IMG/VR virus record: IMGVR_UViG_3300028864_000016
Coordinates: 1-64,000 of that record
DNA: 64,000 nt
Direction: 5' to 3' (one strand)
The notes under the pieces were generated by a model that saw only the letters and a list, made by a program, of their open reading frames with translations, was not told where the DNA came from and made no database searches. The translations under genes were made by a program, and so were the position numbers. This document shows, piece by piece, positions 5,523 through 45,890 of this stretch; position 1 is the stretch's first letter, and each line of letters begins with the position of its first letter.

Positions 5523-5705
5523 TTAAAATCACTCCTAAATATTATTTTTAATTTGTTTAACTTCTTGATACTAGTATATCAAATGTACACTTCATTGTCA
5601 ATGAATTAATAGAAGAAAGTTTAAATAAAAGTTGACTTTTAATTGGTTTTCATTCTCATTCAGTTATGGTCAAAAAGAAAAGGAACTATTAATATTAGTT
5701 CCTTA

Positions 5706-7130: not shown

Positions 7131-7430
7131 CTATATTAGCTTTTGTCTTTTCATAAAATTTTTCACTTCTGAAACGTCCCAAATTTCTTTTTCCCATTCT
7201 CCAATATTTTTACTTAATGAAGCTTCTACATAATCAAACTCAACTGTAACTCCTTCTTTAATTAATTTATCAAGATATGAACCCTGTCTATATAATTCCA
7301 TTTGATACATGTTATTTTGACTATCTATGATAAATGTACCTACTTTATTTTTTCTAAAACATAGTTTTAAACCTTTTGTTTCTAACTCTGATATTATATT
7401 GTTAAAATTTACTGTAATATTTTTTTTCAT
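7131..7430 (-). CDS. Hypothetical protein
   Basis: AGGAG RBS with leader hairpin at 7448-7473. Confidence 0.75.
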   Translation of the reverse strand: MKKNITVNFNNIISELETKGLKLCFRKNKVGTFIIDSQNNMYQMELYRQGSYLDKLIKEGVTVEFDYVEASLSKNIGEWEKEIWDVSEVKNFMKRQKLI

Positions 7431-7592
7431 TGTAAAAACTCCTTTTCACCTTAACCGCCTTTCGGTCGGTGGTTTTTATATTCTGTTAATTTGTTTATGT
7501 ATTTCTTAATATTATAATATCATACCTATATATCAATTGCAAGAATTATTTTAATAAATTAATATAATAAAACATTACTTAAAATTCTTATT

Positions 7593-7862
7593 TTATTTAC
7601 TCTTATGTTTGTTATGTCTTTTTGATTGCTTTGACCAATGTGGTTTGCTATAATCATGGATTCCACATTCTTTACATTCATCCCATAATAATATTGTGCC
7701 GTCTTCCATCCAATCACCAATATTTAAATACTTACAATATCCAGATAACTGTTTATGTTTTGTTTTATTAAAACTTAACCATTTACAGGTTTTAATATTT
7801 TTATTTTCATAACAATAACAAGTATCTTTAGGTATCCATTTTTTCATTGCTCTTTTTTTCAT
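7593..7862 (-). CDS. Small Cys-rich protein
   Basis: CYCY, CKWL, YCKY, CKECG. Confidence 0.7.
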   Translation of the reverse strand: MKKRAMKKWIPKDTCYCYENKNIKTCKWLSFNKTKHKQLSGYCKYLNIGDWMEDGTILLWDECKECGIHDYSKPHWSKQSKRHNKHKSK

Positions 7863-8129
7863 AATTGATACTCCTTTAAGTATAATTTAATTTCATTATT
7901 TAATATATCAGTAGTCTTTATAATTCTAATGTCTGTATTAAACCTATCTAAAGTGATCCACTGGTCAAATATACAGTACTGATTATCTTTAACAAATATA
8001 TTTGCGACTTTTCTTATATCATTGTAATAATTTATATTATTATTTCTAAAAACTTATTCCTAAACCTTGCTTAATCTTATTTCTTCTCTACGTTCTTTGA
8101 GTAGATGTTTAAAATCACCATTTCAATCA

Positions 8130-8474
8130 CTTTTAATGAGTTTGATTCATCAACATAAATATTTTCATAGAAATCAACCTCAGCTTTTAAATTATCTTGT
8201 AAAGGTACTATAAATCTAAATTTACTTATTAAACTATTAGGTTGTCTATTTTTATATAAATCTTCATATGTATCTTTTGATATTTCAACTTCATACTCTT
8301 CTCTAATCTTATCACCTTTACTTTAACAGTTAAATAATATTGCCAACTATTAATTTCTCATATTCTTACTTCTGGTGTGTAAGATAAATAACTTTGTTTT
8401 ATTAATTTACTTGGATACAATATCCACATGTTTTCAACGTTTCCATTGAATAAAAACTTTCTTTCTATTTCCAT
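8130..8474 (-). pseudogene. Frameshifted CYTH-domain (triphosphate tunnel metalloenzyme) gene remnant
   Basis: Fragments MEIEKK, YLSYTPEVRI, YYLTVK, KGDKIREEYEVEIS, SKFRFIVPL, AEVDFYE lie in shifting frames with stops; left end approximate. Confidence 0.7.
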
Positions 8475-8608
8475 ATTATATACTCTCCCTTATTTTTATT
8501 TAAATAATCCATTTTTAATTTTGTTTTTTATATTACAAAACATCTCCTTATATTATTTATTTTATTTACAAAGGGTATACTACTATTAAATAATATACCC
8601 TTATATTT

Positions 8609-9076
8609 CTACCTGTTTGCAAATTCTGCTGGAATTAATGCTTTAAAATTAATGTATGTTCCAAAAAATACATGCATAGCACTTTTAATTTCTGATAAAC
8701 TTGGTTTTGATATATTATAAATATTTTCAATTGTATCAGCATCTGAATTATTTACATCTTCAAGAGTGTTAAAACCAGCTCTTTTTAATGTATTAAATGT
8801 TCTTTGGCTAATATATCCATCACTTAATAAATATTCCACGTTGTGAACATCTGACAATGTATATAATTTTGTTGATTTTCTAAAAGTCTTAGCAACTCCA
8901 CCGTTTTCTTTCCAGTGGCTTTTAAAACTTGAGAAATCACTTGCTAAGCGTACTGTTATAGATTTTTCAGTTTCTTTTTCAATTTTTATAACTTCAAATA
9001 AAAATCCATCTGTTTCTGGAATTTCCATTCCTACCTTTAATTCACTTGCATTTATTGTTATTATCATTATAATCAT
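8609..9076 (-). CDS. Protein with C-terminal RNA polymerase alpha-CTD-like domain
   Basis: ISQRTFNTLKRAGFNTLEDV...IYNISKPSLSEIK resembles RpoA CTD LSVR.YNCLKRAGINT...NLG.KSLEE. Confidence 0.8.
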   Translation of the reverse strand: MIIMIITINASELKVGMEIPETDGFLFEVIKIEKETEKSITVRLASDFSSFKSHWKENGGVAKTFRKSTKLYTLSDVHNVEYLLSDGYISQRTFNTLKRAGFNTLEDVNNSDADTIENIYNISKPSLSEIKSAMHVFFGTYINFKALIPAEFANR

Positions 9077-9142
9077 TCTCCTTTTTCTGCTTTAACTCCG
9101 TGTAGGTGAGTAGCTATTACTTATTAATTTATTTATATATTA

Positions 9143-9436
9143 TTAATTTAATATTGTTGCTTTTCTAGCTACAAACCACATAGGCTCTATTCTGTCCATT
9201 ATCAAAGTTTCATCTAATGTCATTTGATAACGAGGATTGTTTTTATTGTATCTATCTAATGACTGTTTTCTTTCTTCTATTGTTTCTAAATCTATAACTT
9301 TTAATGTATATTGTGGTGTATCACATGCCTCTGAATATGGTTCAATTCCAATTACTTCATATGTAGTATTTCCCATTTTGCATTGAGTTCCTATTTTTAC
9401 AGTTTTAATTACATTTTCAATTTTCATATCAATCAA
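9143..9436 (-). CDS. Hypothetical protein
   Basis: ORF with RBS and own promoter. Confidence 0.7.
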   Translation of the reverse strand: MIDMKIENVIKTVKIGTQCKMGNTTYEVIGIEPYSEACDTPQYTLKVIDLETIEERKQSLDRYNKNNPRYQMTLDETLIMDRIEPMWFVARKATILN

Positions 9437-9628
9437 TCTCCTTTTATAGTCATTTAAGACTTTTTTATATTTATTAATTTATTTCCTTGAGATAATAATA
9501 CTACGTTTTGATATGTTTGTCTATAGTTTTTAAACAAATTAATAAAATTATTTTTATATAAAACTTATGTTTTATCACTTCTTTAAATTGTGCCAAAATT
9601 TATAATCTATTTAATTTTCTCCTTATCA

Positions 9629-9814
9629 TTACCCATATATTTCATCAACTCCATAAAAGTCAAATTCTATTTCTGATAATTTGCCATCATATTTATCATA
9701 TTGTTTTGTATTTTCTAATATCTTCTTGACTTCCTCTAAAGATTCTGCTCTAATTAATAATATTTTTATGTCCCAAACTTCAAAACCAGTCTCTATATAC
9801 TTAAATAATTTCAT
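9629..9814 (-). CDS. Hypothetical protein
   Basis: 61 aa ORF in array orientation. Confidence 0.55.
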   Translation of the reverse strand: MKLFKYIETGFEVWDIKILLIRAESLEEVKKILENTKQYDKYDGKLSEIEFDFYGVDEIYG

Positions 9815-9893
9815 AAAAAATTCACTTCCTTTACCTTTTTATCTCATTTATGAGCTTATTGTAATCTATAATTTATTTAAAATTATATGTTGT

Positions 9894-10097
9894 TTAATAA
9901 TGTCCAAATTCTTGTTCTGTATCATACTCAAACCAATCATTAAAATTTTGTTCTTCTTTTGGAACTCTTTCTATTAATGGTATGGCATGGTTTTTGTTAT
10001 ACTTTATTTTGGGATTCCCTTTTCTATATATGCTACCACTTACATGACAACATATCACTACATCTTTAAATTTCATAATTTTAATTCCCTCTTTCAT
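9894..10097 (-). CDS. Hypothetical protein
   Basis: ORF; true start probably the internal Met (MKFKD). Confidence 0.6.
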   Translation of the reverse strand: MKEGIKIMKFKDVVICCHVSGSIYRKGNPKIKYNKNHAIPLIERVPKEEQNFNDWFEYDTEQEFGHY

Positions 10098-10218
10098 TTA
10101 TTAATTTGTTTTACTTATTAATATAATTATATCAAATACGCTGAGAACTACAATGGTTTTTAAATAAATTAACAGAAAAACAATTCAACATATACTACTG
10201 AAATAATCATTTTATATA

Positions 10219-10515
10219 TTAAATTGCTAAAAGAGTACTTATGATTTCATCAATAACTGAGATAGGTGTTTTATTTTCCTTGTTTCCTGTATTGCCAATA
10301 TTAATATATTCATCTTCATCAATAAATACATTATAAATATAAACTTCTTCTCCATTGTCATCATCTTCATAACTTACGCCAATACTAATATCACTATTAT
10401 CTATATTTTCTATTGTATTAGTTTGAAAAATGCCCTCATTCTTTATTAATTCATTAAAAAATATTTCTTTATTAATAAATTCTAAAATCTCAGATGAATT
10501 TTTTGTAAATTTCAT
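10219..10515 (-). CDS. Acidic hypothetical protein
   Basis: GGGAG RBS, leader hairpin 10535-10563, own promoter. Confidence 0.75.
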   Translation of the reverse strand: MKFTKNSSEILEFINKEIFFNELIKNEGIFQTNTIENIDNSDISIGVSYEDDDNGEEVYIYNVFIDEDEYINIGNTGNKENKTPISVIDEIISTLLAI

Positions 10516-10677
10516 AATATCTACTCCCTTATGTACCTTAACTCCCTTATAAAGGTGAGTGGCTAATGTTTTAATTTGTTTCTATAATTACATTATACTC
10601 TCATTCTATGGTAAGTCAAGTATTATTTTAATAAATTAATATAATTATTTTCGATTAAAATACTAACTTTATAGTAA

Positions 10678-11589
10678 TTATTTAGCTTGAATTACTTCAT
10701 CATTCTGCGTAGTCACTGTTAAACTATCATCTACTTTATAACTGTCATTATCTGCATAGAATGAATATAAATTATTATCTATTTTAATTACAACTAAATT
10801 ATTTTGTTCTGGATAAGTAGCAACTACACTTGCTTTATATTCACCGTTTAACGCCTCATGTACGTCTTTAGATTCTAAGTCAAGTATTATTCTATCTCCT
10901 TTATTCCATTGCTCATGGTCTTCTATAGCACGTTCAAAATTATATACTTTATTATTATATTCTGCTTGGATAAAATACTTATCAGAATTAATTACAGTTG
11001 CATTTACGTCTTGTGCCATTACTGGATTAGATGTAGTTAATAATACTATAGTTGCTATTACAAATGATTTTACAAATGTCTTAACTTGTTTAACAGTATT
11101 ATTAGGTTTAGTTGTTTTTGTGGTAGCTTGGTTTAATTCTTCTAATTTGAATGATAACCAGTCAAAGTCTTCTCTGTTTTCTACTTCTTGTGATAATTCT
11201 GTAAAGATTCTATCTGCTTCAATTTCTTCTTGAGTTCCCTCTATTGCGTTTCTAAAGTTTGCTTTTGCTTCTTGATATTTAATGTATAGTTGTTCATTTG
11301 ATAAGGTTTTAATTGATTCTTCATTTGATTTATTATATTTTTTTAATAAATTTTCCACGAATTCTTTATTTGCTGGAGTATTTTCATTTATTTCTTCATT
11401 ATTAATCATATCATGAACATCTAATTTCATTTCACTTGCTTTTTTATCATCATATCCCATAATATTTTTCCATCTATCTATTTCTCTTTCAAAATTTAAT
11501 AATATATCTAATTTACTTATTGGATATTCGTTCCATGCATAAGATTTAACTTTAAAATATTTATTTATTGTTGTTTTCATTTTAATCAT
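10678..11589 (-). CDS. Hypothetical protein with internal hydrophobic/signal-like segment and beta-rich C-terminal domain
   Basis: KSFVIATIVLLTTSNPVMAQ segment mid-protein. Confidence 0.7.
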   Translation of the reverse strand: MIKMKTTINKYFKVKSYAWNEYPISKLDILLNFEREIDRWKNIMGYDDKKASEMKLDVHDMINNEEINENTPANKEFVENLLKKYNKSNEESIKTLSNEQLYIKYQEAKANFRNAIEGTQEEIEADRIFTELSQEVENREDFDWLSFKLEELNQATTKTTKPNNTVKQVKTFVKSFVIATIVLLTTSNPVMAQDVNATVINSDKYFIQAEYNNKVYNFERAIEDHEQWNKGDRIILDLESKDVHEALNGEYKASVVATYPEQNNLVVIKIDNNLYSFYADNDSYKVDDSLTVTTQNDEVIQAK

Positions 11590-11825
11590 ACTCCTTAATT
11601 TAATTATTAAATATTTTTTATTTGCTTTAATTTATTTAACTTGTCTGTTTTATATGTAAGTTACAACTTTTAACTATTTAAATTTTATACTTGAACTATC
11701 CTGCCACGCATTCTAGCTTGGAGACTTAAAAGGTTTTATTAAGTTGTAACCTTGTCTACATTTATAATTATAAAGGATTGTTTTGTATTTGTCAATAAAT
11801 TAATAGAAATACTTTGAATTGTTTT

Positions 11826-13544
11826 TCACACTGCAACTTGTTCTGATTTCTCTATTTCTGATAAATAATAATTTAATATTATTTTAGCATCTTTTAAAGT
11901 CGAACAACTACCCTTTTTAAAACTATTTCCATTTGCATCAACTGCAATAAAAGTTCCCCAAATATTTAATATATAATAATCTTGTGCATTTACTATAGTT
12001 ATATAAGCAGTTTTTTCAACCAAGTTACTACCTTGAAAATAATTATTTCCATTTGAAATTGATACATTAACTTGTTTTTTAATTCTCTTATATTCATATT
12101 CTTTTTTATTTGATAATACTGCATCAATAAACTTTTTATCTTTTTCTTTTATTATTTTACCTTTTATATCCCCTAGTTTGCTTTTATATTCACTCTCTAG
12201 TGCTATTAGCTCTCTCATTAAGTTATCGTGTCTAGAATTCATTTTAGCGTCTTTACGTGCATTTCTTCCGTCTCTACCTGTTGTCATCCAGCTTGGGTTG
12301 TCTGCATTATTTCTAAGTAGTTTATAATAATTTTCATAGTAACGTTTCTTATAACTATTTAACCATGATTTATATTTATTCTTAATTGAATTATCTTCTA
12401 ACTTATCTAATTCGATAATAAATTTATTTTGATAATTATTTAAATAATTTAATATTTCTTGTTGGTGGTCACGTTCTTTAGTTCTCATAACCCAATGACC
12501 ATCATTTTCTCTTTTGCTTATTTCTTTAGATATTAGAAAATTTTCAGCGTTTATATTATCAATGTTAATTTCTATTGGTTCAACTTCTTTTAACTCTGTT
12601 GTATTGATTGTATTATTTTCTTGTTGCCCTTCATTATTTAATAAACCTATTGATTGCAAAAATTGTTTCGCTTGCTCTGAGTCTTTAGTATACCAACATT
12701 TATTAAATTTTGCCCACCTGTAACCATTTGCTTTTAACTGATTTCTAATTTCTTCACTTGGTTTGTCATTGAAATATAATTCTATTCCGTTCTTTTCTGT
12801 ATTAAATTTAACTTCACAACCAATTTCATTGTTTATAGTTTGTTCTGTTGATTCTATTGTTATTTCTTGAATTGATTCAACTGCTGAAGTTTCTTTTGTT
12901 TCTGGTTCTGCAACAATTTCTATAACTTCAACTGGTTTAGATTCTTTTATTATATCACCTTTTTTAGTTTCTATTTTATTAAGAACTTCACAAACTTTTA
13001 TTATTTCTTGAGTTAATCCTATTGTGCAACTATATTCATTACCTGAAGAAATAGTTTGACCTTTTTTTCCTAATTCCTTGATATATATTGTTTTATTTTC
13101 TCTAAATTTAACTAACCATATAGTTCTATTTCCTATGTATTTTTCTCCAAAAGTTCCAAATTTAATTCCATTAGGAAATTTAATAATTGAACCATCTTTT
13201 ACTTCTTGATTTTCTGATTTTACAAATTCAATTACTACTTCTTCTGAGTTAATTCCATTTAAATACTCATTAACTTCCTTTTTAGCTTTCTTCAAATCAG
13301 TCACTATTTCTATATTCATATTTGGGTCATTTTTGATTGATTTTTCATTGTAAAAATAATATCTATATCCACCACTTTTTTCAGTTCCATCAAGTTTAAC
13401 TTTAATTAAGCAATATTCATTTTTTACTATTGAATATCTAGCATCTTTCTTTGTGTAATCGTGAGCTACAACATATATATCATTTTCGCCTTTAACTATA
13501 GTTCCTGTTAATTTAACAAATTGACCTTCTTGTAATTGTAACAT
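11826..13544 (-). CDS. Multidomain protein with polyvalent-protein-associated (LPD-like) domain
   Basis: NTEKNGIELYF.DKPSEEIR..LKANGYRW....KCWY motif common in phage/conjugative-element early proteins. Confidence 0.7.
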   Translation of the reverse strand: MLQLQEGQFVKLTGTIVKGENDIYVVAHDYTKKDARYSIVKNEYCLIKVKLDGTEKSGGYRYYFYNEKSIKNDPNMNIEIVTDLKKAKKEVNEYLNGINSEEVVIEFVKSENQEVKDGSIIKFPNGIKFGTFGEKYIGNRTIWLVKFRENKTIYIKELGKKGQTISSGNEYSCTIGLTQEIIKVCEVLNKIETKKGDIIKESKPVEVIEIVAEPETKETSAVESIQEITIESTEQTINNEIGCEVKFNTEKNGIELYFNDKPSEEIRNQLKANGYRWAKFNKCWYTKDSEQAKQFLQSIGLLNNEGQQENNTINTTELKEVEPIEINIDNINAENFLISKEISKRENDGHWVMRTKERDHQQEILNYLNNYQNKFIIELDKLEDNSIKNKYKSWLNSYKKRYYENYYKLLRNNADNPSWMTTGRDGRNARKDAKMNSRHDNLMRELIALESEYKSKLGDIKGKIIKEKDKKFIDAVLSNKKEYEYKRIKKQVNVSISNGNNYFQGSNLVEKTAYITIVNAQDYYILNIWGTFIAVDANGNSFKKGSCSTLKDAKIILNYYLSEIEKSEQVAV

Positions 13545-13601
13545 ATCAATCTACCTCACTTCAATTATTTTAATTTGTTTACTTGTTCCCTATGTATCTA
13601 T

Positions 13602-13619
13602 TATAAGTCACGACTTATA
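13602..13619. promoter_or_regulatory. Palindromic operator TATAAGTC-AC-GACTTATA overlapping -10 of minus-strand promoter
   Basis: Palindrome; second copy TAAGTCATGACTTA at 14492-14505 in the same register to its -10. Confidence 0.7.
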
Positions 13620-13678
13620 TATCTGTCAATAACTTTTTTAATAAATTAATAGGATTATTTAAATATATTTTTTATTGC

Positions 13679-13876
13679 TTATAGATTGTTATATTTACGT
13701 GCTTTAACTTCTTTTATTAATTCCTCAATATCCTGTATATCTTCAAATGTTGCTTTATTCTTAATAAAACTTTTACAAGCTGATTTACTTTTTGTATAAT
13801 TAACTTTATCCTTGTTCTTATCTTCCCATGCCTTAACTGCTTGTAATTGTGCCTTAGATGTTTTTATACCCTCCAT
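13679..13876 (-). CDS. Small basic putative DNA-binding regulator
   Basis: KTSKAQLQAVKAWEDKNK...ACKSFIK pattern typical of small phage regulators. Confidence 0.6.
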   Translation of the reverse strand: MEGIKTSKAQLQAVKAWEDKNKDKVNYTKSKSACKSFIKNKATFEDIQDIEELIKEVKARKYNNL

Positions 13877-13985
13877 TATTTAAACCTCCTTACATGGTCT
13901 TATATAGTCTTTATTTGCTTATATAATTATAATAGTATTGTTACATATTTGTAAAGAAAAAGAAGCTTCTCAGCCTCCTATCTTA

Positions 13986-14246
13986 TTAATCAATAAACCC
14001 TTCTAACATTAATATTATTCCATATAACGCTTTTCTTTTTTCCTCAATTGAATTTGTATCGTTTAAACCATTAAAACAACTTCTATAATATTCTAATACT
14101 TCTACTGCTTCATTATTGTTTATTTCATTTATTAAGTCGTTCTTAAATTCTTCAATATTACCTTTGTAATAAAATACTAACCCTTCTTTAAAATTGCTTT
14201 CATATTTTACTATTTCATTTACTACCGCCATATTATTTTTCTTCAT
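13986..14246 (-). CDS. Hypothetical protein
   Basis: AGGAG RBS. Confidence 0.65.
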   Translation of the reverse strand: MKKNNMAVVNEIVKYESNFKEGLVFYYKGNIEEFKNDLINEINNNEAVEVLEYYRSCFNGLNDTNSIEEKRKALYGIILMLEGFID

Positions 14247-14739
14247 TTTAATCGACTCCTTTAATATTAATTAATTTATTATGTAAGTAGGTTATATTCT
14301 ATTTAATATATAACCATGAAAATATTTTAGCTTTAGCAACTTGATCTTTTAACATTCTTTGTAACTCTTCTGCTTTAACTTCTTTGATTGTTCTATCCTT
14401 GTAGACTATAACTGCCATAAATATCATTCTCCTTTAAATTTATTAATTTGTTTTACTTGTTGCTAAGTTCCCTTAGCTGATAATATAATTATAAGTCATG
14501 ACTTAGATTTTGTAAAAGTTAATTTAAGGTTATTTGGGATTGTTTATAACAAATTAATAGAGTTATACTTTGTTTATCTCTTAATATCTCCGTTTTACTA
14601 TATTTTTAATTTTATTTTATCTTAATTTATTGATAAAAGAGTTGTTTTAAAGCAATATTGATTATTAGTATCATTTATAAAAATGCAAAAAAGAAAACTG
14701 GATTTTACTCCAGCTTCATCATATTTTTATTTAATTGTT

Positions 14740-15027
14740 TTATATTGCTTTTAAAAGTTTATTTTCTTCAATTTCATTTTTGAATTTCTCAATTATATCT
14801 GGATAATCTTTTAAAACTTCATTAGATACGTTTAACCCTGTCCATATTGCATCCATTATAGCAACTTTGTGTTTTGCTATCTCTGTTTGTATTCTTGTTC
14901 TTATCCATCCTTCTGGTTTTTCTATTTGGTCTAACCATATTTCTTTTTTATGTTCGCTTAAAGTATTATAAATACCATTTAAATATTCTTTCTTAGTAAC
15001 TTCAAATATATTTTTCATATTAATCAT
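14740..15027 (-). CDS. Hypothetical protein
   Basis: AGGAG RBS, terminator 14687-14717. Confidence 0.65.
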   Translation of the reverse strand: MINMKNIFEVTKKEYLNGIYNTLSEHKKEIWLDQIEKPEGWIRTRIQTEIAKHKVAIMDAIWTGLNVSNEVLKDYPDIIEKFKNEIEENKLLKAI

Positions 15028-15713
15028 TCTCCTTTTAATTTATTATTTATCTAATCCACCATTTTTAACACAATATTCTTTTATAATTTCCTGTGCCTTC
15101 TTATGAGCGTCTTCTAATTCTCCAGTATGTAATTGGTCTCCATTCTTTAGTGAAAACAGTACAAATTCTATTGTTTGCATTGCGTTTGTTAATTCTTTAA
15201 TATCCATATTTATAACCACCTTATCTTTTATTTTATATTAATTTGTTTTCTTGAATTAATAATACCACTTTTTAATATTCCTGTCTATAGTTTTTAACAA
15301 ATTAATATAAAAAGTTTTGATAAAAGGTGGTTTTTATTGGAAGTTAATATTTGTTAATTTATTAAAAATCCAATTATCTGACCGTAAGGGAAGAAAAGCG
15401 TAGCGGTAGCTACAAGACTGTTATCCACTAAATGTTGTATTATCACCTAACGCCCTAACGGTTGTTCTTTTGCTCGTCTTTCAGACTTCACAAATAGAAT
15501 TGATTTATTTAATTGAAAAAGTGCCTATTTTAGTTAATATATATTATTACTTTTATATATATTCTATTTAACAGACACCACCTTCAACCCTAGTCATAGA
15601 GCCATTCTTTTTTGATTTTATAACTTCTCACTCTTTTAATTTGTTTAATTGTATTTGTTTTAATATGTAAAATCCTTTTATTTCTTTATATTTTAATTTA
15701 TTTTATAACTTTT

Positions 15714-16955
15714 TTAAGAAAATAGGTTATAAAAATTTTCATCTTCAAGCCATAATGTTAATAAGTTTCTCATTCTCTTTGATGGAATATAAATTGTAAT
15801 AGGTTCATAACGTCTTATTCTGCTTCTCCATAGCCATTGTATTAATTCACTTAAAGCATATAAGTCTTGATTGATTGTAATGTCTTTAGACTTAAAGAAC
15901 TGGTCTATAAAAGGCTGATTAAATATATTAATGCAATAAGCTAAATTATATCTTTCTACATAATCATTAGTTGCTCTTAGGTTACAAGCAATAAATCCTT
16001 TTGTATATCCTTTTCCTTTTAACTTACTTTGTTGATCTTTAAAGGTTGTCCATAATACAGTATCACTTTTTGCTTTTAGTTTATTGATAAAGAAATTTGT
16101 TATATTGCTTTTTAATTGTTTAACGCTTTCTTTGTTAGTATCATTTCTAAACCAACTATGACTTAAATTATAATATTCTTCACCTACTGCATTAAGTTTT
16201 TCATCATCCATAAACGTTATATTTTCTTTTAACTTATCCTTTACTTCTTTTTCAATAAGTTTGTAGTTGTCATCTTTAGATTTAATTACATATGTATTCA
16301 ATTTATTTAGATTAGCATAATAGTATTCGTATTTGATACCATTCATTTGATAATAATAACATTGTTCCTGAGCTTCAAATAAGTAAGTCAATATGTAAGC
16401 ATCTTTAAAAGCTTTGAATATTTCAACTGGAAACATCCATATAAGTATTACATCTTTATAAACTATTATACTTTTGTTTATTGCTAAGTATTTAATATTT
16501 TCAAAAGCTCCGGTATATTCTTTTTGTTCATTCCATATTAGATAATCATTTTCAATTTTTGCATAACCATCATTTATTATCATGTTAACATCATTCTTAC
16601 TTATATTACATTGCTCTATAACGTTAAATACTTCATCAAGGATTAATATATAATCATTACTTTTTAATAGTTCTACAGTCTGCATATTAGCTTTATGAAA
16701 TAGTGCATGAGTACTTACAATATTTTTACCTTCTGATATTAATTTGTTTAAGTTGTCAAATTTGTTACCGTGTTGATTATATTTAGGTTCTTGGAATCTT
16801 CTTGACTTACAATTCTTTTTAACTCTTTCAACTTCACTTAAAAACGGTGTAATATAAATATACTTATTGTTTGTTGTGTCATGATTAATCATATTTATAA
16901 TTGCACTTGTTTTTCCACTTCCCGGTATTGAATCTACTATCTTAATTCTACACAT
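15714..16955 (-). CDS. Superfamily 2 helicase-like protein (SPbeta YonV-like)
   Basis: Walker A PGSGKTS, ITPFLSE, ILDEV, motif VI-like QWLWRSRIR. Confidence 0.75.
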   Translation of the reverse strand: MCRIKIVDSIPGSGKTSAIINMINHDTTNNKYIYITPFLSEVERVKKNCKSRRFQEPKYNQHGNKFDNLNKLISEGKNIVSTHALFHKANMQTVELLKSNDYILILDEVFNVIEQCNISKNDVNMIINDGYAKIENDYLIWNEQKEYTGAFENIKYLAINKSIIVYKDVILIWMFPVEIFKAFKDAYILTYLFEAQEQCYYYQMNGIKYEYYYANLNKLNTYVIKSKDDNYKLIEKEVKDKLKENITFMDDEKLNAVGEEYYNLSHSWFRNDTNKESVKQLKSNITNFFINKLKAKSDTVLWTTFKDQQSKLKGKGYTKGFIACNLRATNDYVERYNLAYCINIFNQPFIDQFFKSKDITINQDLYALSELIQWLWRSRIRRYEPITIYIPSKRMRNLLTLWLEDENFYNLFS

Positions 16956-17274
16956 TTGTTTTATTCTCCTTTTTAGTTATTATTAAATGATTCCAATTGT
17001 CGTTAGTAACTTTTTTATATTCCATATTATAGCCTTCTAAATGATTTATAACTTCATGTATTTTATTACGGTTTAACTCTTCCCATAGTTGAGATTGTTC
17101 CTCCTTATTGAGTTCTACATTTAAATACTTTTCTATAATTGGTATATATTTTTCATATGTTTTTAACTTTTCTAAAGCAATTATACATTGTATCTTAAAC
17201 CTTGTTCCTTCTAATGCTTTAATTTGTAATTCTAATAAGTTAACTTGTTCTTGTAATTCATTAATATTAATCAT
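16948..17274 (-). CDS. Hypothetical protein
   Basis: RBS, overlaps start of helicase gene. Confidence 0.65.
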   Translation of the reverse strand: MININELQEQVNLLELQIKALEGTRFKIQCIIALEKLKTYEKYIPIIEKYLNVELNKEEQSQLWEELNRNKIHEVINHLEGYNMEYKKVTNDNWNHLIITKKENKTNV

Positions 17275-17291
17275 TATATTTCTCCTTTCTT

Positions 17292-17681
17292 TTATATATT
17301 GAATGGTGTTTCTTTGTAATTATCTAGTACAATATTAATATATTTCTTATCTGCTGAATAAATAATGTCATAGTTTTCAAAATATAAGTTATTCATTTCA
17401 AATACATTCTTATAATCTAATAATCCATCCTTAGATATCATTGATCTAACTGGATATATTACTAATTTGTCTAATGTCCAATTTTGTGCTAACATGAATC
17501 TGAATCTTTTATTCTTCTTATCATAGTATAAAATATCTTGTGTCAATATATCTACTCCATATTGTAAAGGCATTTTGTCAGCAAATATAATATATTTTCC
17601 TTTCTTTAATTCACTAACTATATGTAATATACTTGTTAGTTGAGTCATTTTAATATTGTTGAATTCTTTAATTTTTATCAT
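17292..17681 (-). CDS. Hypothetical protein
   Basis: AGGAG RBS. Confidence 0.65.
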   Translation of the reverse strand: MIKIKEFNNIKMTQLTSILHIVSELKKGKYIIFADKMPLQYGVDILTQDILYYDKKNKRFRFMLAQNWTLDKLVIYPVRSMISKDGLLDYKNVFEMNNLYFENYDIIYSADKKYINIVLDNYKETPFNI

Positions 17682-17841
17682 TTTTCATTCTCCTTTTATT
17701 CTATTAATTTATTAATAATATTACTTTAAGAGTTACAACTCCAATATTTTTTGAAGCTATAACTCTTTATCTATATTAACCACTTAAAGTGGATTGTACT
17801 ATATTTATTTATATTAAATAGATTTTTAATTATTTAGCTGA

Positions 17842-18084
17842 TTAAAATTTAATTTCAATTGGTTTTAAGTCAGTTTCATTGAAAAAACCACCTGCTATTG
17901 AACCATCCTTAAATATAGTAAAATTCATCACACCTTTATGATATATACGTGGTATAGTCATAATTATATTGCCTATAGAATTAATTTTGTAAGTGATTTT
18001 ATTTAAGTCATACCCCTTATTTTCAGCTCTGTTTAATACTTTCTTAATTTGATTTTTAATTGATTCATTAATCATCTTAATCAA
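17842..18084 (-). CDS. Hypothetical protein
   Basis: RBS and leader hairpin 18097-18124. Confidence 0.65.
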   Translation of the reverse strand: MIKMINESIKNQIKKVLNRAENKGYDLNKITYKINSIGNIIMTIPRIYHKGVMNFTIFKDGSIAGGFFNETDLKPIEIKF

Positions 18085-18125
18085 TTCCTTTCAACTGCCT
18101 TAACCTCTAAAACTAGTAGGTAGCT

Positions 18126-18380
18126 TTATTTTATATTTTCTATTACTTCTAGTTTTAATTCACTATTTAATAAATATTTTACAGTCATTTCAAATGGATA
18201 TGGACTACTTGAATCTTGAAATTTGATTTTATCTTCATTAACTTCTAACACTAAAGCTAATTTCTTAGTTTCGTCTTCTTGTAAATCTTCTTCATCTTCA
18301 AATTTTAAAAGTTCTTTTGTATAGTCTATTAAAACATTATCACCTTTTTGGATTTTGCTAATTAATTCTTTTTTATTCAT
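18126..18380 (-). CDS. Hypothetical protein
   Basis: RBS and own promoter. Confidence 0.65.
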   Translation of the reverse strand: MNKKELISKIQKGDNVLIDYTKELLKFEDEEDLQEDETKKLALVLEVNEDKIKFQDSSSPYPFEMTVKYLLNSELKLEVIENIK

Positions 18381-26902: not shown

Positions 26903-27988
26903 TTATCTTTTGAAATCATTCATTGCTCTACTAAATAAATTATCTATATCATCATCATCTATAATATCTTCAAATTTAGTCTCTTCTATAGTTTCAGATT
27001 TTTCATTAGTTTTAGTGTTGTTAGTATGTTTGGATTTAAAAGAAAAACCACGATTTTTATTTTTTCCTTTTTTTAATTCTCTTTCTGTTAATTCTGATTC
27101 AATGTCTTCTATATCGTCATTTGGAGTTTCACAACCACCAAGACAAATTAAGTTACTTTTTCCATAAGTTTTAAACATTGTTTTATCAGCATTTATTAAT
27201 TCAAGTATATCTGCTATATTGTATTTTTCTGTAACATTTATAGCTCCATACTCACAGTCTAAATCATTTGGCAGTGCAAATACACTTTTTTCTTGAGCTT
27301 CACTTATTGCATCCTCTAATGAACTATAATTAGTTGGTAATTGCAATACAATTCCATATCCTTTAGACGTAGTAACATTAGTTAAATTATCCTCATCTAT
27401 ACTACCAATTGCATCATGTCCTAACATACTATAGGATTTATTTATTAATTTAATTGATTCAGTATTAATTTCTTCATATGTGTCACGTTTGTTATTATTA
27501 ATAAATTTTATATCATTAATTAAATTAGATATTTCTGATAATTCTTCACAACATTCTAAAGCATTTTTTAATTGTAAGTTGTCTTCCTTAAGACTTGGCA
27601 AAACTCCAACAACATTAATTATCATATTAGGAAATATCTTTTTAATAGTTCTTATAAATTCAGGTACAGTACCTGATCCAGTCCCTCCACCCATTGCCGT
27701 GAATATTAAAATATATTTAAACTGAGCATATTTTTTTAAAAAAGAAGCTAATCTAACTTGGTCATTTAATATAAATTTATTTGCTCTTTCTCTATTTCTT
27801 CCTGACCCGTCTGCTCCACCATAAATAAAAACATTACTATCAATATCAGCAAAACGAAGTCCTTTTATATCTCCTAAACTTGAATTAATATAAATACTTG
27901 TATATCTTTCATTTACTGTTCTCATTAAATCTGCTAATACATTACCACATTGCCCTAAACCAGCTATTAATAGATTATCACGTTTCAT
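26903..27988 (-). CDS. tubZ: Tubulin/FtsZ-family partition GTPase TubZ
   Basis: GLGQCGN, GADGSGRNR, tubulin signature GGGTGSG, T7-like IDEDN, basic/acidic tail; terminator 26858-26891. Confidence 0.88.
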   Translation of the reverse strand: MKRDNLLIAGLGQCGNVLADLMRTVNERYTSIYINSSLGDIKGLRFADIDSNVFIYGGADGSGRNRERANKFILNDQVRLASFLKKYAQFKYILIFTAMGGGTGSGTVPEFIRTIKKIFPNMIINVVGVLPSLKEDNLQLKNALECCEELSEISNLINDIKFINNNKRDTYEEINTESIKLINKSYSMLGHDAIGSIDEDNLTNVTTSKGYGIVLQLPTNYSSLEDAISEAQEKSVFALPNDLDCEYGAINVTEKYNIADILELINADKTMFKTYGKSNLICLGGCETPNDDIEDIESELTERELKKGKNKNRGFSFKSKHTNNTKTNEKSETIEETKFEDIIDDDDIDNLFSRAMNDFKR

Positions 27989-45519: not shown

Positions 45520-45890
45520 ACATTGCAGACACTCATGTGAGGTTTGACAATTTATTAATTTTATAACGAATATTAAACGTGTAACGAGAATTGCATAGAA
45601 GTAGAAAATGGTTCTCTACAGACTCGAAAGAGTATCTCAGATGATGGATACACCGACCATCCTATGCAATTTAATAAAACAACTATTTTAGAAGGTATTT
45701 AAGTGAGGGCTAACACTCATTCCCCAGAGTAATTTTTATTTACTCGTCACTCCTTGAGGGGACGTTAAAATAATATTCAAGGCAAGGTTAGAATAGGGCG
45801 TGAAAACCTAACAAAGTGTTGAATTGAGTTATGATGACTTTAACAAAAAAGTAGGCGATTTGATAATGTGAAGTTATCCATCGCCTATAT
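45520..45890 (+). ncRNA. Cluster of stem-loops, putative ncRNA(s)
   Basis: AATTGCATAG/CTATGCAATT (45589-45671) enclosing three hairpins; further stems to 45888; ORF-free. Confidence 0.45.

What the first reader, a model, noticed from the sequence alone, without database searches (positions are those of the whole stretch)
7448..18124. Four copies of a covarying RNA motif just upstream of Shine-Dalgarno sequences
Seen on the minus strand: 7448-7473 ACC-A-CCG-A-CC(GAAA)GG-CGG-UUAA-GGU; 9089-9114 GCU-A-CUC-(ACCUACACG)-GAG-UUAA-AGC; 10535-10563 GCC-A-CUC-A-CCUU(UAU)AAGG-GAG-UUAA-GGU; 18097-18124 GCU-A-CCU-A-CUA(GUUU)UAG-AGG-UUAA-GGC. The stems differ in sequence but keep pairing (CCG/CGG, CUC/GAG, CCU/AGG), while the A/UUAA internal loop and the second A are invariant. 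Each ends 4-7 nt before the RBS of an unrelated gene. Inference: a protein-binding or RNase-processing element that co-regulates a subset of early genes, including the alpha-CTD mimic. I do not recognise it as a named family.
Basis: partly seen in the sequence, partly recalled or inferred. Interest (0 to 1): 0.75.

Follow-up and report, generated by a model that had tools for sequence, protein, structure and literature searches.

The report
Conserved bulged hairpin before phage start sites
Four copies of a small, precisely conserved RNA hairpin sit just upstream of the ribosome-binding sites of unrelated genes in an uncultured 218-kb peat phage. The same hairpin recurs in about 30 sequence versions in other phages and prophages and matches no described RNA family, so it is probably a new control element for a subset of phage messages.

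Summary
All four copies are at the stated minus-strand coordinates. A covariance model finds exactly these four in the whole 218,173-bp genome, at 30-35 bits against 16 bits for the next hit.

The consensus is GCY | ACnn | A | C-[variable hairpin]-G | n'n'GU | UAA | RGC. That is three stacked helices, an invariant bulged A and an invariant 3-nt UAA bulge.

I found 31 distinct versions in related and unrelated phage contigs, one provirus and MAG contigs, at 22-48% GC. Each lies 3-15 nt before a Shine-Dalgarno sequence (4-9 nt in most) and 17-26 nt before a start codon. Nineteen copies with a callable downstream ORF precede 17 unrelated gene families.

The middle pairs of P2 and all of P3 covary, and orthologous leaders show double compensatory swaps. 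Rfam 15 has no match.

The Shine-Dalgarno sequence is not sequestered. No terminators follow the motif inside its operons. One copy is intercistronic, so the function is tied to the ribosome-binding site rather than the transcription start.

Best reading, at about 0.4: a translational operator or enhancer recognised through its bulged lower helix by an unidentified protein or by the 30S subunit. RNase processing or 5' stabilisation is the main rival. The function is inferred; no RNA data exist for this phage.

The parts
7448..7473 (-). Motif copy m1: P1 ACC/GGU, P2 ACCG/CGGU, bulged A, P3 CC(GAAA)GG, UAA bulge.
   Evidence: 33.5 bits. Ends 4 nt before the SD and 17 nt before ATG 7430.
9089..9114 (-). 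Motif copy m2: P1 GCU/AGC, P2 ACUC/GAGU, bulged A, P3 C(CUACAC)G, UAA bulge.
   Evidence: 35 bits. Precedes the alpha-CTD-domain gene.
10535..10563 (-). Motif copy m3: P1 GCC/GGU, P2 ACUC/GAGU, bulged A, P3 CCUU(UAU)AAGG, UAA bulge.
   Evidence: 31.4 bits.
18097..18124 (-). Motif copy m4: P1 GCU/GGC, P2 ACCU/AGGU, bulged A, P3 CUA(GUUU)UAG, UAA bulge. Intercistronic: it begins 2 nt after the stop of ORF 18126-18380.
   Evidence: 29.8 bits.
7131..7430 (-). Gene downstream of m1, 99 aa, no family match. SD AAGGAG at 7444-7439.
8609..9067 (-). Gene downstream of m2, 152 aa (155 aa if started at 9076), with a C-terminal RNA polymerase alpha-CTD domain. SD AGGAG at 9082-9078.
   Evidence: PF03118, 35.7 bits; P0001, 152 aa.
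10219..10515 (-). Gene downstream of m3, 98 aa, no family match. SD GGGAG at 10528-10524.
17842..18075 (-). Gene downstream of m4, 77 aa, with only a sub-threshold CdiA_C hit. SD AAGGA at 18090-18086.
10592..10619 (-). Sigma-70-like promoter TTGACT-16-TATAAT, 28 nt upstream of m3.
   Evidence: 11 of 12 matches.
7514..7542 (-). Sigma-70-like promoter candidate TTGCAA-17-TATTAT, about 40 nt upstream of m1.
   Evidence: Read. Consensus match only.
10571..10581 (-). Leader box AAACAAATTAA between the promoter and m3.
7486..7496 (-). Leader box AAACAAATTAA between the promoter and m1.

Best explanation
The element is a structured RNA in the 5' leader, or intercistronic spacer, of a subset of phage messages. 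It is a 26-33-nt hairpin of three stacked helices.
- P1: 3 bp, GCY/RGC.
- P2: 4 bp, ACnn/n'n'GU.
- P3: 1-4 bp, always closed by C-G, with a free loop.
- P1 and P2 are separated by an invariant 3-nt UAA bulge on the 3' strand.
- P2 and P3 are separated by an invariant bulged A on the 5' strand.

Shown: the structure, its conservation, and its fixed position 3-15 nt upstream of the Shine-Dalgarno sequence.

Inferred: the conserved lower half (P1, UAA bulge, the A-U and C-G pairs of P2, the bulged A and the C-G pair) is the recognition surface for a trans-acting factor. That factor is either an unidentified RNA-binding protein or the platform side of the 30S subunit itself. When bound at the foot of the ribosome-binding site it would set the rate or timing of translation initiation of the gene immediately downstream. 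This is the operator/enhancer logic of the T4 gp43 and coat-protein operators.

Because the hairpin does not itself mask the SD, regulation would need the bound factor to occlude or recruit the ribosome.

The factor is more likely host-encoded or ribosomal than phage-encoded. Motif-bearing phages of very different lineages share no obvious specific protein.
For: 1. Structure.
- On 24 distinct sequences, 97.9% of cells are paired. The covariation score is 0.353 against 0.167 in shuffles (0 of 500 reach it). Slid registers collapse to 20-55% paired.
- Pair 6/21 is UA:15, CG:8. Pair 7/20 is CG:14, UA:6, GC:3. Pair 3/27 is CG:13, UA:5, UG:3.
- P3 has more than 20 different sequences that still pair: 2.65 bp on average against 1.53 when the interior is shuffled.
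- Orthologous leaders swap two adjacent P2 pairs while everything else is unchanged. G001:72069 has ACUC/GAGU and G005:50208 has ACCU/AGGU, in front of 40%-identical genes.

2. Specific recognition. The bulged A, the UAA bulge (29 of 31), the A-U and C-G pairs of P2, the C-G pair of P3 and the GC of P1 are invariant from 22% to 48% GC contexts. Loops and middle pairs are free.

3. Tie to the RBS.
- The start codon is 17-26 nt after the motif in all 31 versions.
- m4 is intercistronic while the others follow promoters.
- GC-richer lineages add an outer helix P0 whose 3' strand abuts the SD.

4. No intrinsic switch. The SD is predicted mostly unpaired, 0.6-0.97 in most copies.

5. Independence of gene identity. 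Nineteen copies with a callable downstream ORF precede 17 unrelated protein families.

6. Modularity. Metagenomic variants of the same promoter region go straight to an SD without the hairpin (loose end at 9122).

7. No shared phage factor among those tested. Alpha-CTD, NusG, S21 and S1 domains are absent from the motif-bearing records tested. No ORF is shared by all motif-bearing records and absent from the motif-less relative G006.
Against: - No binding partner is identified.
- No listed RNA-seq run holds this phage, so neither transcript ends nor expression could be examined.
- The attempted uL18-RNA complex prediction was not folded by the tool and says nothing either way.
- Part of the data set was retrieved with sequence patterns and a model that presuppose the conserved letters and the fold, which inflates the apparent invariance.
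- The near-constant distance to the SD could partly reflect common descent of whole leader modules, for example the recurrent UACAUAAAGGAG.
- Only 1-4 copies occur per genome, and many equally strong promoters lack the motif. No coherent regulon can be defined.
Confidence: 0.4

Rival explanations
1. RNA processing or stability element. A host endoribonuclease (RNase Y- or E-like) cuts in the A-rich single strand just 5' of the hairpin, or in the UAA bulge. The hairpin then sits at the new 5' end and shields the downstream message from 5'-to-3' decay (RNase J1). This would uncouple the expression of that gene from the rest of the transcript.
For: - The hairpin is GC-rich in a 24-26% GC genome and is preceded by an A-rich unstructured leader.
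- It occurs both after promoters and between cistrons.
- m1-m3 lie in one terminator-free stretch from 10563 to 5704 that could be a single long transcript needing internal processing.
- 5'-proximal hairpins are established stabilisers in Firmicutes (general knowledge).
Against: - A simple stabiliser needs only a stable stem. It does not explain the invariant bulged A, the UAA bulge and the closing pairs across 22-48% GC lineages.
- The helices total only 8-11 bp, too short for a classical RNase III site (established knowledge).
- No 5'-end data exist.
Confidence: 0.2
2. Protein-independent translational enhancer. The folded hairpin docks directly on the 30S platform, or stacks on the SD/anti-SD helix, and raises initiation on selected messages.
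For: - The distance to the SD is constrained, and the SD sits at the very foot of the extended helix in GC-rich lineages.
- The SD is left accessible.
- The motif spreads across phage lineages that share no candidate protein.
Against: - No complementarity of the conserved unpaired bases (A, UAA) to the 16S 3' tail was seen.
- There is no precedent with this anatomy.
- It cannot be distinguished computationally from the protein-operator model.
Confidence: 0.12
3. Promoter-proximal antitermination or RNAP-modifying RNA of the nut/boxB or put type, which makes host RNA polymerase read through terminators in early operons.
For: - Most copies lie 20-40 nt downstream of sigma-70-like promoters, with a few copies per genome, as for nutL/nutR.
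- One downstream protein (L262) has an arginine-rich N-terminus.
Against: - No intrinsic terminators lie between the motifs and the ends of their operons in the window.
- m4 is intercistronic.
- Spacing is fixed relative to the SD, not the promoter. The -10 to motif distance varies from 24 to 40 nt.
- Loops are not conserved, unlike boxB.
- No NusG-like gene is present.
Confidence: 0.07
4. Small riboswitch whose pocket is formed by the two bulges.
For: Invariant unpaired nucleotides are flanked by invariant pairs, and the motif lies in a 5' UTR next to the SD.
Against: - There is no expression platform. No terminator follows, and the SD is unpaired in the predicted ensembles.
- The downstream genes are unrelated small hypothetical proteins rather than a metabolic set.
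- There is no Rfam match.
Confidence: 0.05
5. Mimic of the 5S rRNA loop B / helix II-III region, used to bind ribosomal protein uL18 or a neighbouring 5S-binding protein.
For: The Rfam 5S consensus contains a 2-bp helix ac/gu followed on the 3' strand by unpaired UAAG and then helix II. That is the same AC...GUUAAG arrangement and strand topology as P2, the bulge and P1 of the motif.
Against: - The motif model scores a real 5S gene at only 4.1 bits, E=3.7.
- The 5S loop has 3 unpaired nt on the 5' side, and an AC/AA internal loop where the motif has Watson-Crick pairs.
- Loop C is absent.
- A 6-nt match (GUUAAG) somewhere in about 4.5 kb of rRNA is expected by chance.
- The complex prediction was not run by the tool.
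Confidence: 0.04
6. DNA-level or antisense feature: an operator, a hairpin in single-stranded DNA, or a terminator for antisense transcription.
For: The reverse complement of m1 is called terminator-like on the + strand.
Against: - Only 1 of the 4 copies is called terminator-like.
- The T-run is absent in GC-rich lineages.
- The element is asymmetric and variable in length (26-33 nt), which is unsuited to a dimeric DNA binder.
- Its orientation always follows the downstream gene.
Confidence: 0.03

Closest known systems
Phage T4/RB69 gene 43 (DNA polymerase) translational operator, and MS2/PP7 coat-protein operators
   Same: Each is a small hairpin in a phage mRNA at the 5' edge of the ribosome-binding site. 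Each is recognised by a protein to control initiation. MS2 and PP7 operators also use a bulged A on the 5' strand.
   Different: Those operators are recognised largely through conserved loop bases, serve one gene, and overlap the SD or start codon. Here the loop is free, the conserved features are a UAA bulge plus a bulged A in the lower stem, the SD lies outside the structure, and the element precedes many unrelated genes. No binding protein is known.
Lambda/P22 nut boxB hairpins
   Same: These are short hairpins present in a few copies in the leaders of early phage operons, downstream of host-type promoters, with stems that differ between copies.
   Different: boxB is defined by a conserved GNRA-like pentaloop and a companion boxA, and it acts on terminators. 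Here the loops vary (3-9 nt, GAAA in only a few copies), no terminators follow, and spacing is fixed to the SD.
RAT (ribonucleic antiterminator) sites of the BglG/LicT family
   Same: They are a similar size (about 29 nt) and follow the same design: a hairpin whose asymmetric internal loops or bulges are bound by a protein, rather than its loop.
   Different: The sequence consensus is different. RAT overlaps an intrinsic terminator and precedes sugar-utilisation genes, and neither applies here. This comparison rests on memory and was not tested.
5S rRNA loop B region (Rfam RF00001)
   Same: It shares AC paired to GU, followed by unpaired UAA(G) and a G/C helix.
   Different: It fails at the model level (4.1 bits), and the neighbouring loops differ. 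This is a lead only.
Unnamed candidate structured RNAs catalogued from IMG/VR (Fremin, Bhatt and Kyrpides 2023, PMC10690425)
   Same: That screen predicted 10,006 candidate structured RNAs in viral contigs, including cis-regulatory ones consistently upstream of genes, from the same kind of data.
   Different: Its lists are not held as text, so I could not check whether this motif is among them. No name or function would come with it.

Membership tests
Any Rfam 15 family | Covariance-model score at or above the family's gathering threshold. | tested here: not met
   The whole window at gathering thresholds gives only skipping-rope at 45591-45669. Permissive E<=10 scans around m1 and m3 give only chance hits to unrelated families.
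Kink-turn | A 3-nt bulge followed on the bulged strand by tandem sheared G.A / A.G pairs. | tested here: not met
   After the UAA bulge come R-G-C, Watson-Crick paired with G-C-Y (pairs 1/29, 2/28 and 3/27 are 97% standard pairs). There is no G.A tandem.
Lambda-type boxB / nut | A conserved GNRA-like pentaloop on a 5-bp stem, an adjacent boxA, and downstream terminators to be overridden. | tested here: not met
   Loops are 3-9 nt with more than 20 different sequences. No terminators lie within the operons.
Intrinsic terminator / attenuator | A GC-rich hairpin followed directly by a U-run on the sense strand. | tested here: not met
   The sense strand continues with purine-rich SD sequence. Only the antisense strand of m1 is terminator-like.
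Translational riboswitch | An aptamer plus an expression platform that alternately masks the SD. | tested here: not met
   The probability that the SD is unpaired is 0.6-0.97 in most copies, and there is no conserved alternative pairing. Ligand binding is not testable here.
RNase III processing site | About two turns of double-stranded RNA (roughly 20 bp), as in T7 R1.1 or SP82 sites. | tested here: not met
   P1+P2+P3 total 8-11 bp. The size requirement comes from established knowledge. Cleavage itself is not testable here.
5S rRNA loop B mimic (uL18 site) | The same internal-loop architecture and sequence as 5S helix II / loop B / helix III. | tested here: inconclusive
   The AC/GUUAAG signature is shared, but the motif model scores 5S at 4.1 bits, E=3.7. 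The 5'-side loop and the AC/AA loop are missing. Binding was not tested (one search was not folded).
Protein-bound translational operator (generic class) | A specific trans-acting protein binds the element and changes initiation. | not testable with these tools
   Only the position, the conservation pattern and the free SD are consistent with it. No partner is identified.

The most novel reading that the evidence does not exclude
The hairpin is a portable 'tag' read by a conserved host component: the 30S platform or a ribosomal or RNA-binding protein of Clostridia-type hosts, possibly through partial mimicry of the 5S rRNA loop B surface. Unrelated phages have acquired it independently to give chosen messages privileged or timed translation. 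That would make it a new class of phage translational control element that needs no phage-encoded regulator.
Probability: 0.12. Interest if true: 0.8.

Novelty: new variant of a known kind. Interest (0 to 1): 0.5.

Why it matters
If the inferred function holds, this is a compact (under 30 nt), modular and transferable control element that phages of AT-rich anaerobes place in front of arbitrary genes. Finding its reader would show how such phages single out a few messages during takeover.

It would also give a small orthogonal regulatory part for Gram-positive or clostridial synthetic biology.

One carrier is a provirus from an isolate genome (IMG/VR record 2860493848_000002). That makes the question experimentally tractable even though the window's own phage is uncultured.

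As it stands, this is a well-supported new RNA motif with limited distribution and unknown function. [quoted passage not shown]

Tried and rejected
- Alpha-CTD link. PF03118 is absent from five other motif-bearing records. In relatives that carry the gene, the motif precedes other genes. Rejected.
- Shared phage-encoded reader. All ORFs of G000 were compared by BLAST with G001, G003, G004, G005, G006, G007 and G008. No protein is shared by all motif-bearing records and absent from motif-less G006. NusG, S21 and S1 domains are absent.
- Cellular counterpart. Model R2 on 151 Clostridia-class genomes gave only rare prophage-like hits and no conserved chromosomal locus.
- Cultured relatives. SPbeta, Clostridioides phage pCD1602_4, Fusobacterium phage Fnu1, Staphylococcus phage PT1-1 and Alicyclobacillus phage MMB025 have no copy. 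Record G006, which shares a 79%-identical helicase, has none either.
- SD sequestration or thermometer. Rejected by the ensemble folds.
- K-turn, S8-site mimic (the bulge topology differs, by my own comparison from memory), bulge-helix-bulge (opposite stagger), CsrA site (no conserved GGA in a loop) and IS200/IS605 end hairpins (single, gene-oriented copies). All rejected on anatomy.
- Pairing with the skipping-rope RNA of the same phage. No complementarity.
- RNA evidence. No listed RNA run holds the phage. Read laying on four DNA runs gave only mosaicism information.
- uL18-RNA complex prediction. Not folded by the tool.

Full report
**Source**

The window is the first 64 kb of a 218,173-bp IMG/VR virus record (25.8% GC, CheckV completeness 88%). 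The record comes from peat metagenomes.

Its nearest cultured relatives are only distant. A YonV-like helicase is 47% identical to that of SPbeta, 45% to Clostridioides phages and 33% to Fusobacterium phage Fnu1.

The region 1-28 kb is transcribed on the minus strand. It consists mostly of small ORFs without family matches, plus a primase-like protein, the helicase, a P22 antirepressor-like protein and a tubulin/FtsZ-like protein.

**Checking the observation**

ViennaRNA folds each as an independent hairpin in which the first A pairs with the first U of 'UUAA'.

The anatomy is:
- P1: 3 bp, GCY/RGC.
- A 3-nt UAA bulge on the 3' strand.
- P2: 4 bp, ACnn/n'n'GU.
- A single bulged A on the 5' strand.
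- P3: a variable hairpin that always opens with a C-G pair.

A covariance model built from the four copies (R1) finds only these four in the entire genome, at 30-35 bits. The next hit scores 16 bits.

The consensus with pairing occurs 4 times, against 0 in 300 Markov random windows. A letter-free structural pattern is not enriched. So the finding is sequence plus structure.

Rfam 15 has nothing at these sites, at gathering thresholds or at permissive thresholds.

**Relatives**

Homologues of the alpha-CTD protein led to metagenomic contigs L002-L014. R1 found seven further copies there. None lies in front of the alpha-CTD gene. Each lies about 20 nt before the start of some other small ORF.

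Pattern scans of IMG/VR, GTDB genomes and JGI metagenomes, and model searches of whole records, added more copies. In total there are 31 distinct sequences. They come from:
- AT-rich relatives (G001, G002, G005, G008);
- unrelated phage records at 35-36% GC (G003, 97% complete, and G004);
- one provirus from an isolate genome (G007);
- contigs of a Eubacteriales MAG and a 'Bacteroidales' MAG;
- metagenome contigs up to 48% GC.

In a scan that left the two middle pairs of P2 free but required an SD, 18 sites matched and 7 had both pairs. Six of those 7 were evidently real, with an AT-rich leader, a P3 helix and an ATG at the right distance. The 11 unpaired matches were in GC-rich coding sequence.

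All 14 metagenome matches to the CUC/GAG-specific pattern had a P3 helix, an SD and a start codon in place. None of these was imposed by the pattern.

Cultured SPbeta-like, Clostridioides, Fusobacterium, Staphylococcus and Alicyclobacillus phages lack the motif. A sample of 151 Clostridia-class genomes gave only a handful of prophage-like hits and no conserved cellular locus.

**Structure evidence**

On 24 distinct sequences, 97.9% of cells form standard pairs. No shuffle reaches the covariation score, and slid registers collapse.
- Pair 6/21 alternates U-A and C-G.
- Pair 7/20 alternates C-G, U-A and G-C.
- Pair 3/27 alternates C-G, U-A and U-G.

P3 is different in almost every copy but still pairs.

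The cleanest cases are orthologous leaders. G001:72069 and G005:50208 precede 40%-identical genes. They differ in the motif only by a double compensatory swap, ACUC/GAGU to ACCU/AGGU. L007:4602 and G005:41877 precede 82%-identical genes and differ in P1 (U-A against C-G) and in P3.

In contrast, the bulged A, the UAA bulge (29 of 31; the two exceptions are weak hits in bacterial genomes), the A-U and C-G pairs of P2, the C-G pair of P3 and the G-C and C-G pairs of P1 never change.

Caveat: many copies were retrieved with patterns or models that presuppose these letters, so their invariance is partly imposed. The copies found through protein homology and whole-record model searches show the same picture.

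**Context**

Most copies lie 24-40 nt downstream of a good sigma-70-type -10 box, for example TTGACT-16-TATAAT before m3. m4 instead starts 2 nt after the stop codon of the preceding ORF.

What is constant is the distance to the ribosome-binding site. The SD begins 3-15 nt after the motif, 4-9 nt in most copies, and the start codon follows at 17-26 nt.

In GC-richer lineages an additional outer helix P0 encloses the motif. It is 3-8 bp with a different sequence each time, and its 3' strand ends 0-5 nt before the SD.

Ensemble folding of whole leaders leaves the SD mostly unpaired, so the element is not a self-contained switch.

No intrinsic terminator lies between any window copy and the end of its operon. 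The first minus-strand terminators are at 5704 and 15414.

Nineteen copies with a callable downstream ORF precede 17 unrelated protein families.

Metagenomic contigs laid on the region show that promoter and leader modules are shared among co-occurring phages. One variant of the m2 promoter region runs straight into an SD without the hairpin. The motif is therefore an optional, modular insert between leader and SD.

**Mechanism**

The pattern is free loop and middle pairs, invariant bulges and flanking pairs, a fixed position at the foot of the RBS, and independence from gene identity and from the transcription start. This is what is expected of a recognition site for a trans-acting factor that acts on translation initiation.

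Motif-bearing phages of unrelated lineages share no specific protein, and the obvious candidates are absent. A host factor or the 30S subunit itself is therefore somewhat more likely than a phage repressor. I put this operator/enhancer reading at about 0.4, plus a separate 0.12 for the protein-free version.

The main rival is processing or stabilisation, at 0.2. It explains the GC-rich hairpin and the intercistronic copy but not the invariant bulges.

Antitermination, riboswitch, 5S rRNA mimicry and DNA-level readings each fail at least one test, listed under the rival explanations and the membership tests.

The 5S resemblance is real at the level of eight nucleotides: AC paired to GU, then UAAG, then a G/C helix. 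The motif model does not recognise 5S (4.1 bits). It remains a lead only.

**What could not be done**

- No listed RNA run holds the phage.
- The protein-RNA complex prediction was not folded.
- The supplementary lists of the large IMG/VR structured-RNA catalogue (PMC10690425) are not available as text. An unnamed prior prediction of this motif cannot be excluded.

**Verdict**

The element is a new, unnamed cis-acting RNA motif of phages of AT-rich (probably clostridial) hosts. Interest is moderate.

Noticed in passing
Whole genome; in the window for example 10581-10571, 7496-7486, 13580, 14453, 5558, 18414 (-) and 34477, 34580 (+): An 11-mer box, AAACAAATTAA, occurs 47 times in the 218-kb genome against about 2.9 expected. 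Its strand follows the local gene orientation. It lies either 10-25 nt downstream of sigma-70-like -10 boxes, before the SD or before the hairpin motif, or 10-20 nt upstream of -35 boxes. Relatives G001 and G005 have it too. It could be a UP-like or operator DNA site or a leader RNA element. The phage's alpha-CTD-domain protein makes a UP-element connection worth testing.
   Followed up: partly
window 45591-45669 (+): A clear skipping-rope RNA (RF02924, 61.6 bits), an orphan sRNA family. It has no complementarity to the hairpin motif.
   Followed up: partly
window 26903-27988 (-): A tubulin/FtsZ-family GTPase gene (PF00091, E=4e-14), like the TubZ/PhuZ proteins of large phages. Homologues at about 26% identity are present in G005 and G006.
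   Followed up: no
window 8609-9076 (-): The alpha-CTD-domain protein has homologues at 53-84% identity on many peat and other metagenome contigs (P0002-P0013). Its first ATG (9076) is too close to the SD, so the likely start is 9067.
   Followed up: partly
window 7463-7583, 9036-9156, 10004-10245, 10609-10700: Metagenome contig depth spikes 3- to 10-fold at promoter and leader segments, and many contigs diverge at their edges. Promoter/leader cassettes are shared among several co-occurring phages, which points to a mosaic early region.
   Followed up: partly
L261, L334, L251, L262, L332, L335, L287, L327 (flanks of the motif): In GC-richer lineages an extra outer helix (P0, 3-8 bp, a different sequence each time) encloses the motif and ends at the SD. 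It is absent from the AT-rich relatives of the window.
   Followed up: partly
3' flank of many copies (m3, L002, L003, L007, L009, L010, L254, L253, L336): The spacer between hairpin and SD is often UACAUA. It contains UACAU, the recognition pentamer of Bacillus, Staphylococcus and Clostridioides MazF (from memory). It is not conserved outside the AT-rich lineage, so it probably reflects shared descent of the leaders.
   Followed up: no
G001 (IMGVR_UViG_3300028649_000004) against G000: Long stretches are 100% identical at the protein level, including window 10678-14246, interleaved with divergent segments. This points to very recent recombination or an alternative assembly of one population.
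   Followed up: no
window 7453-7474 (+): The reverse complement of m1 followed by TTTTATATT is called terminator-like on the + strand. This holds for m1 only and is probably incidental.
   Followed up: yes
L002 10688-end; L009 3691-4902: TnpB/Cas12f-like (OrfB_IS605) genes sit within a few kb of the motif in two related contigs. No link to the motif was found.
   Followed up: no
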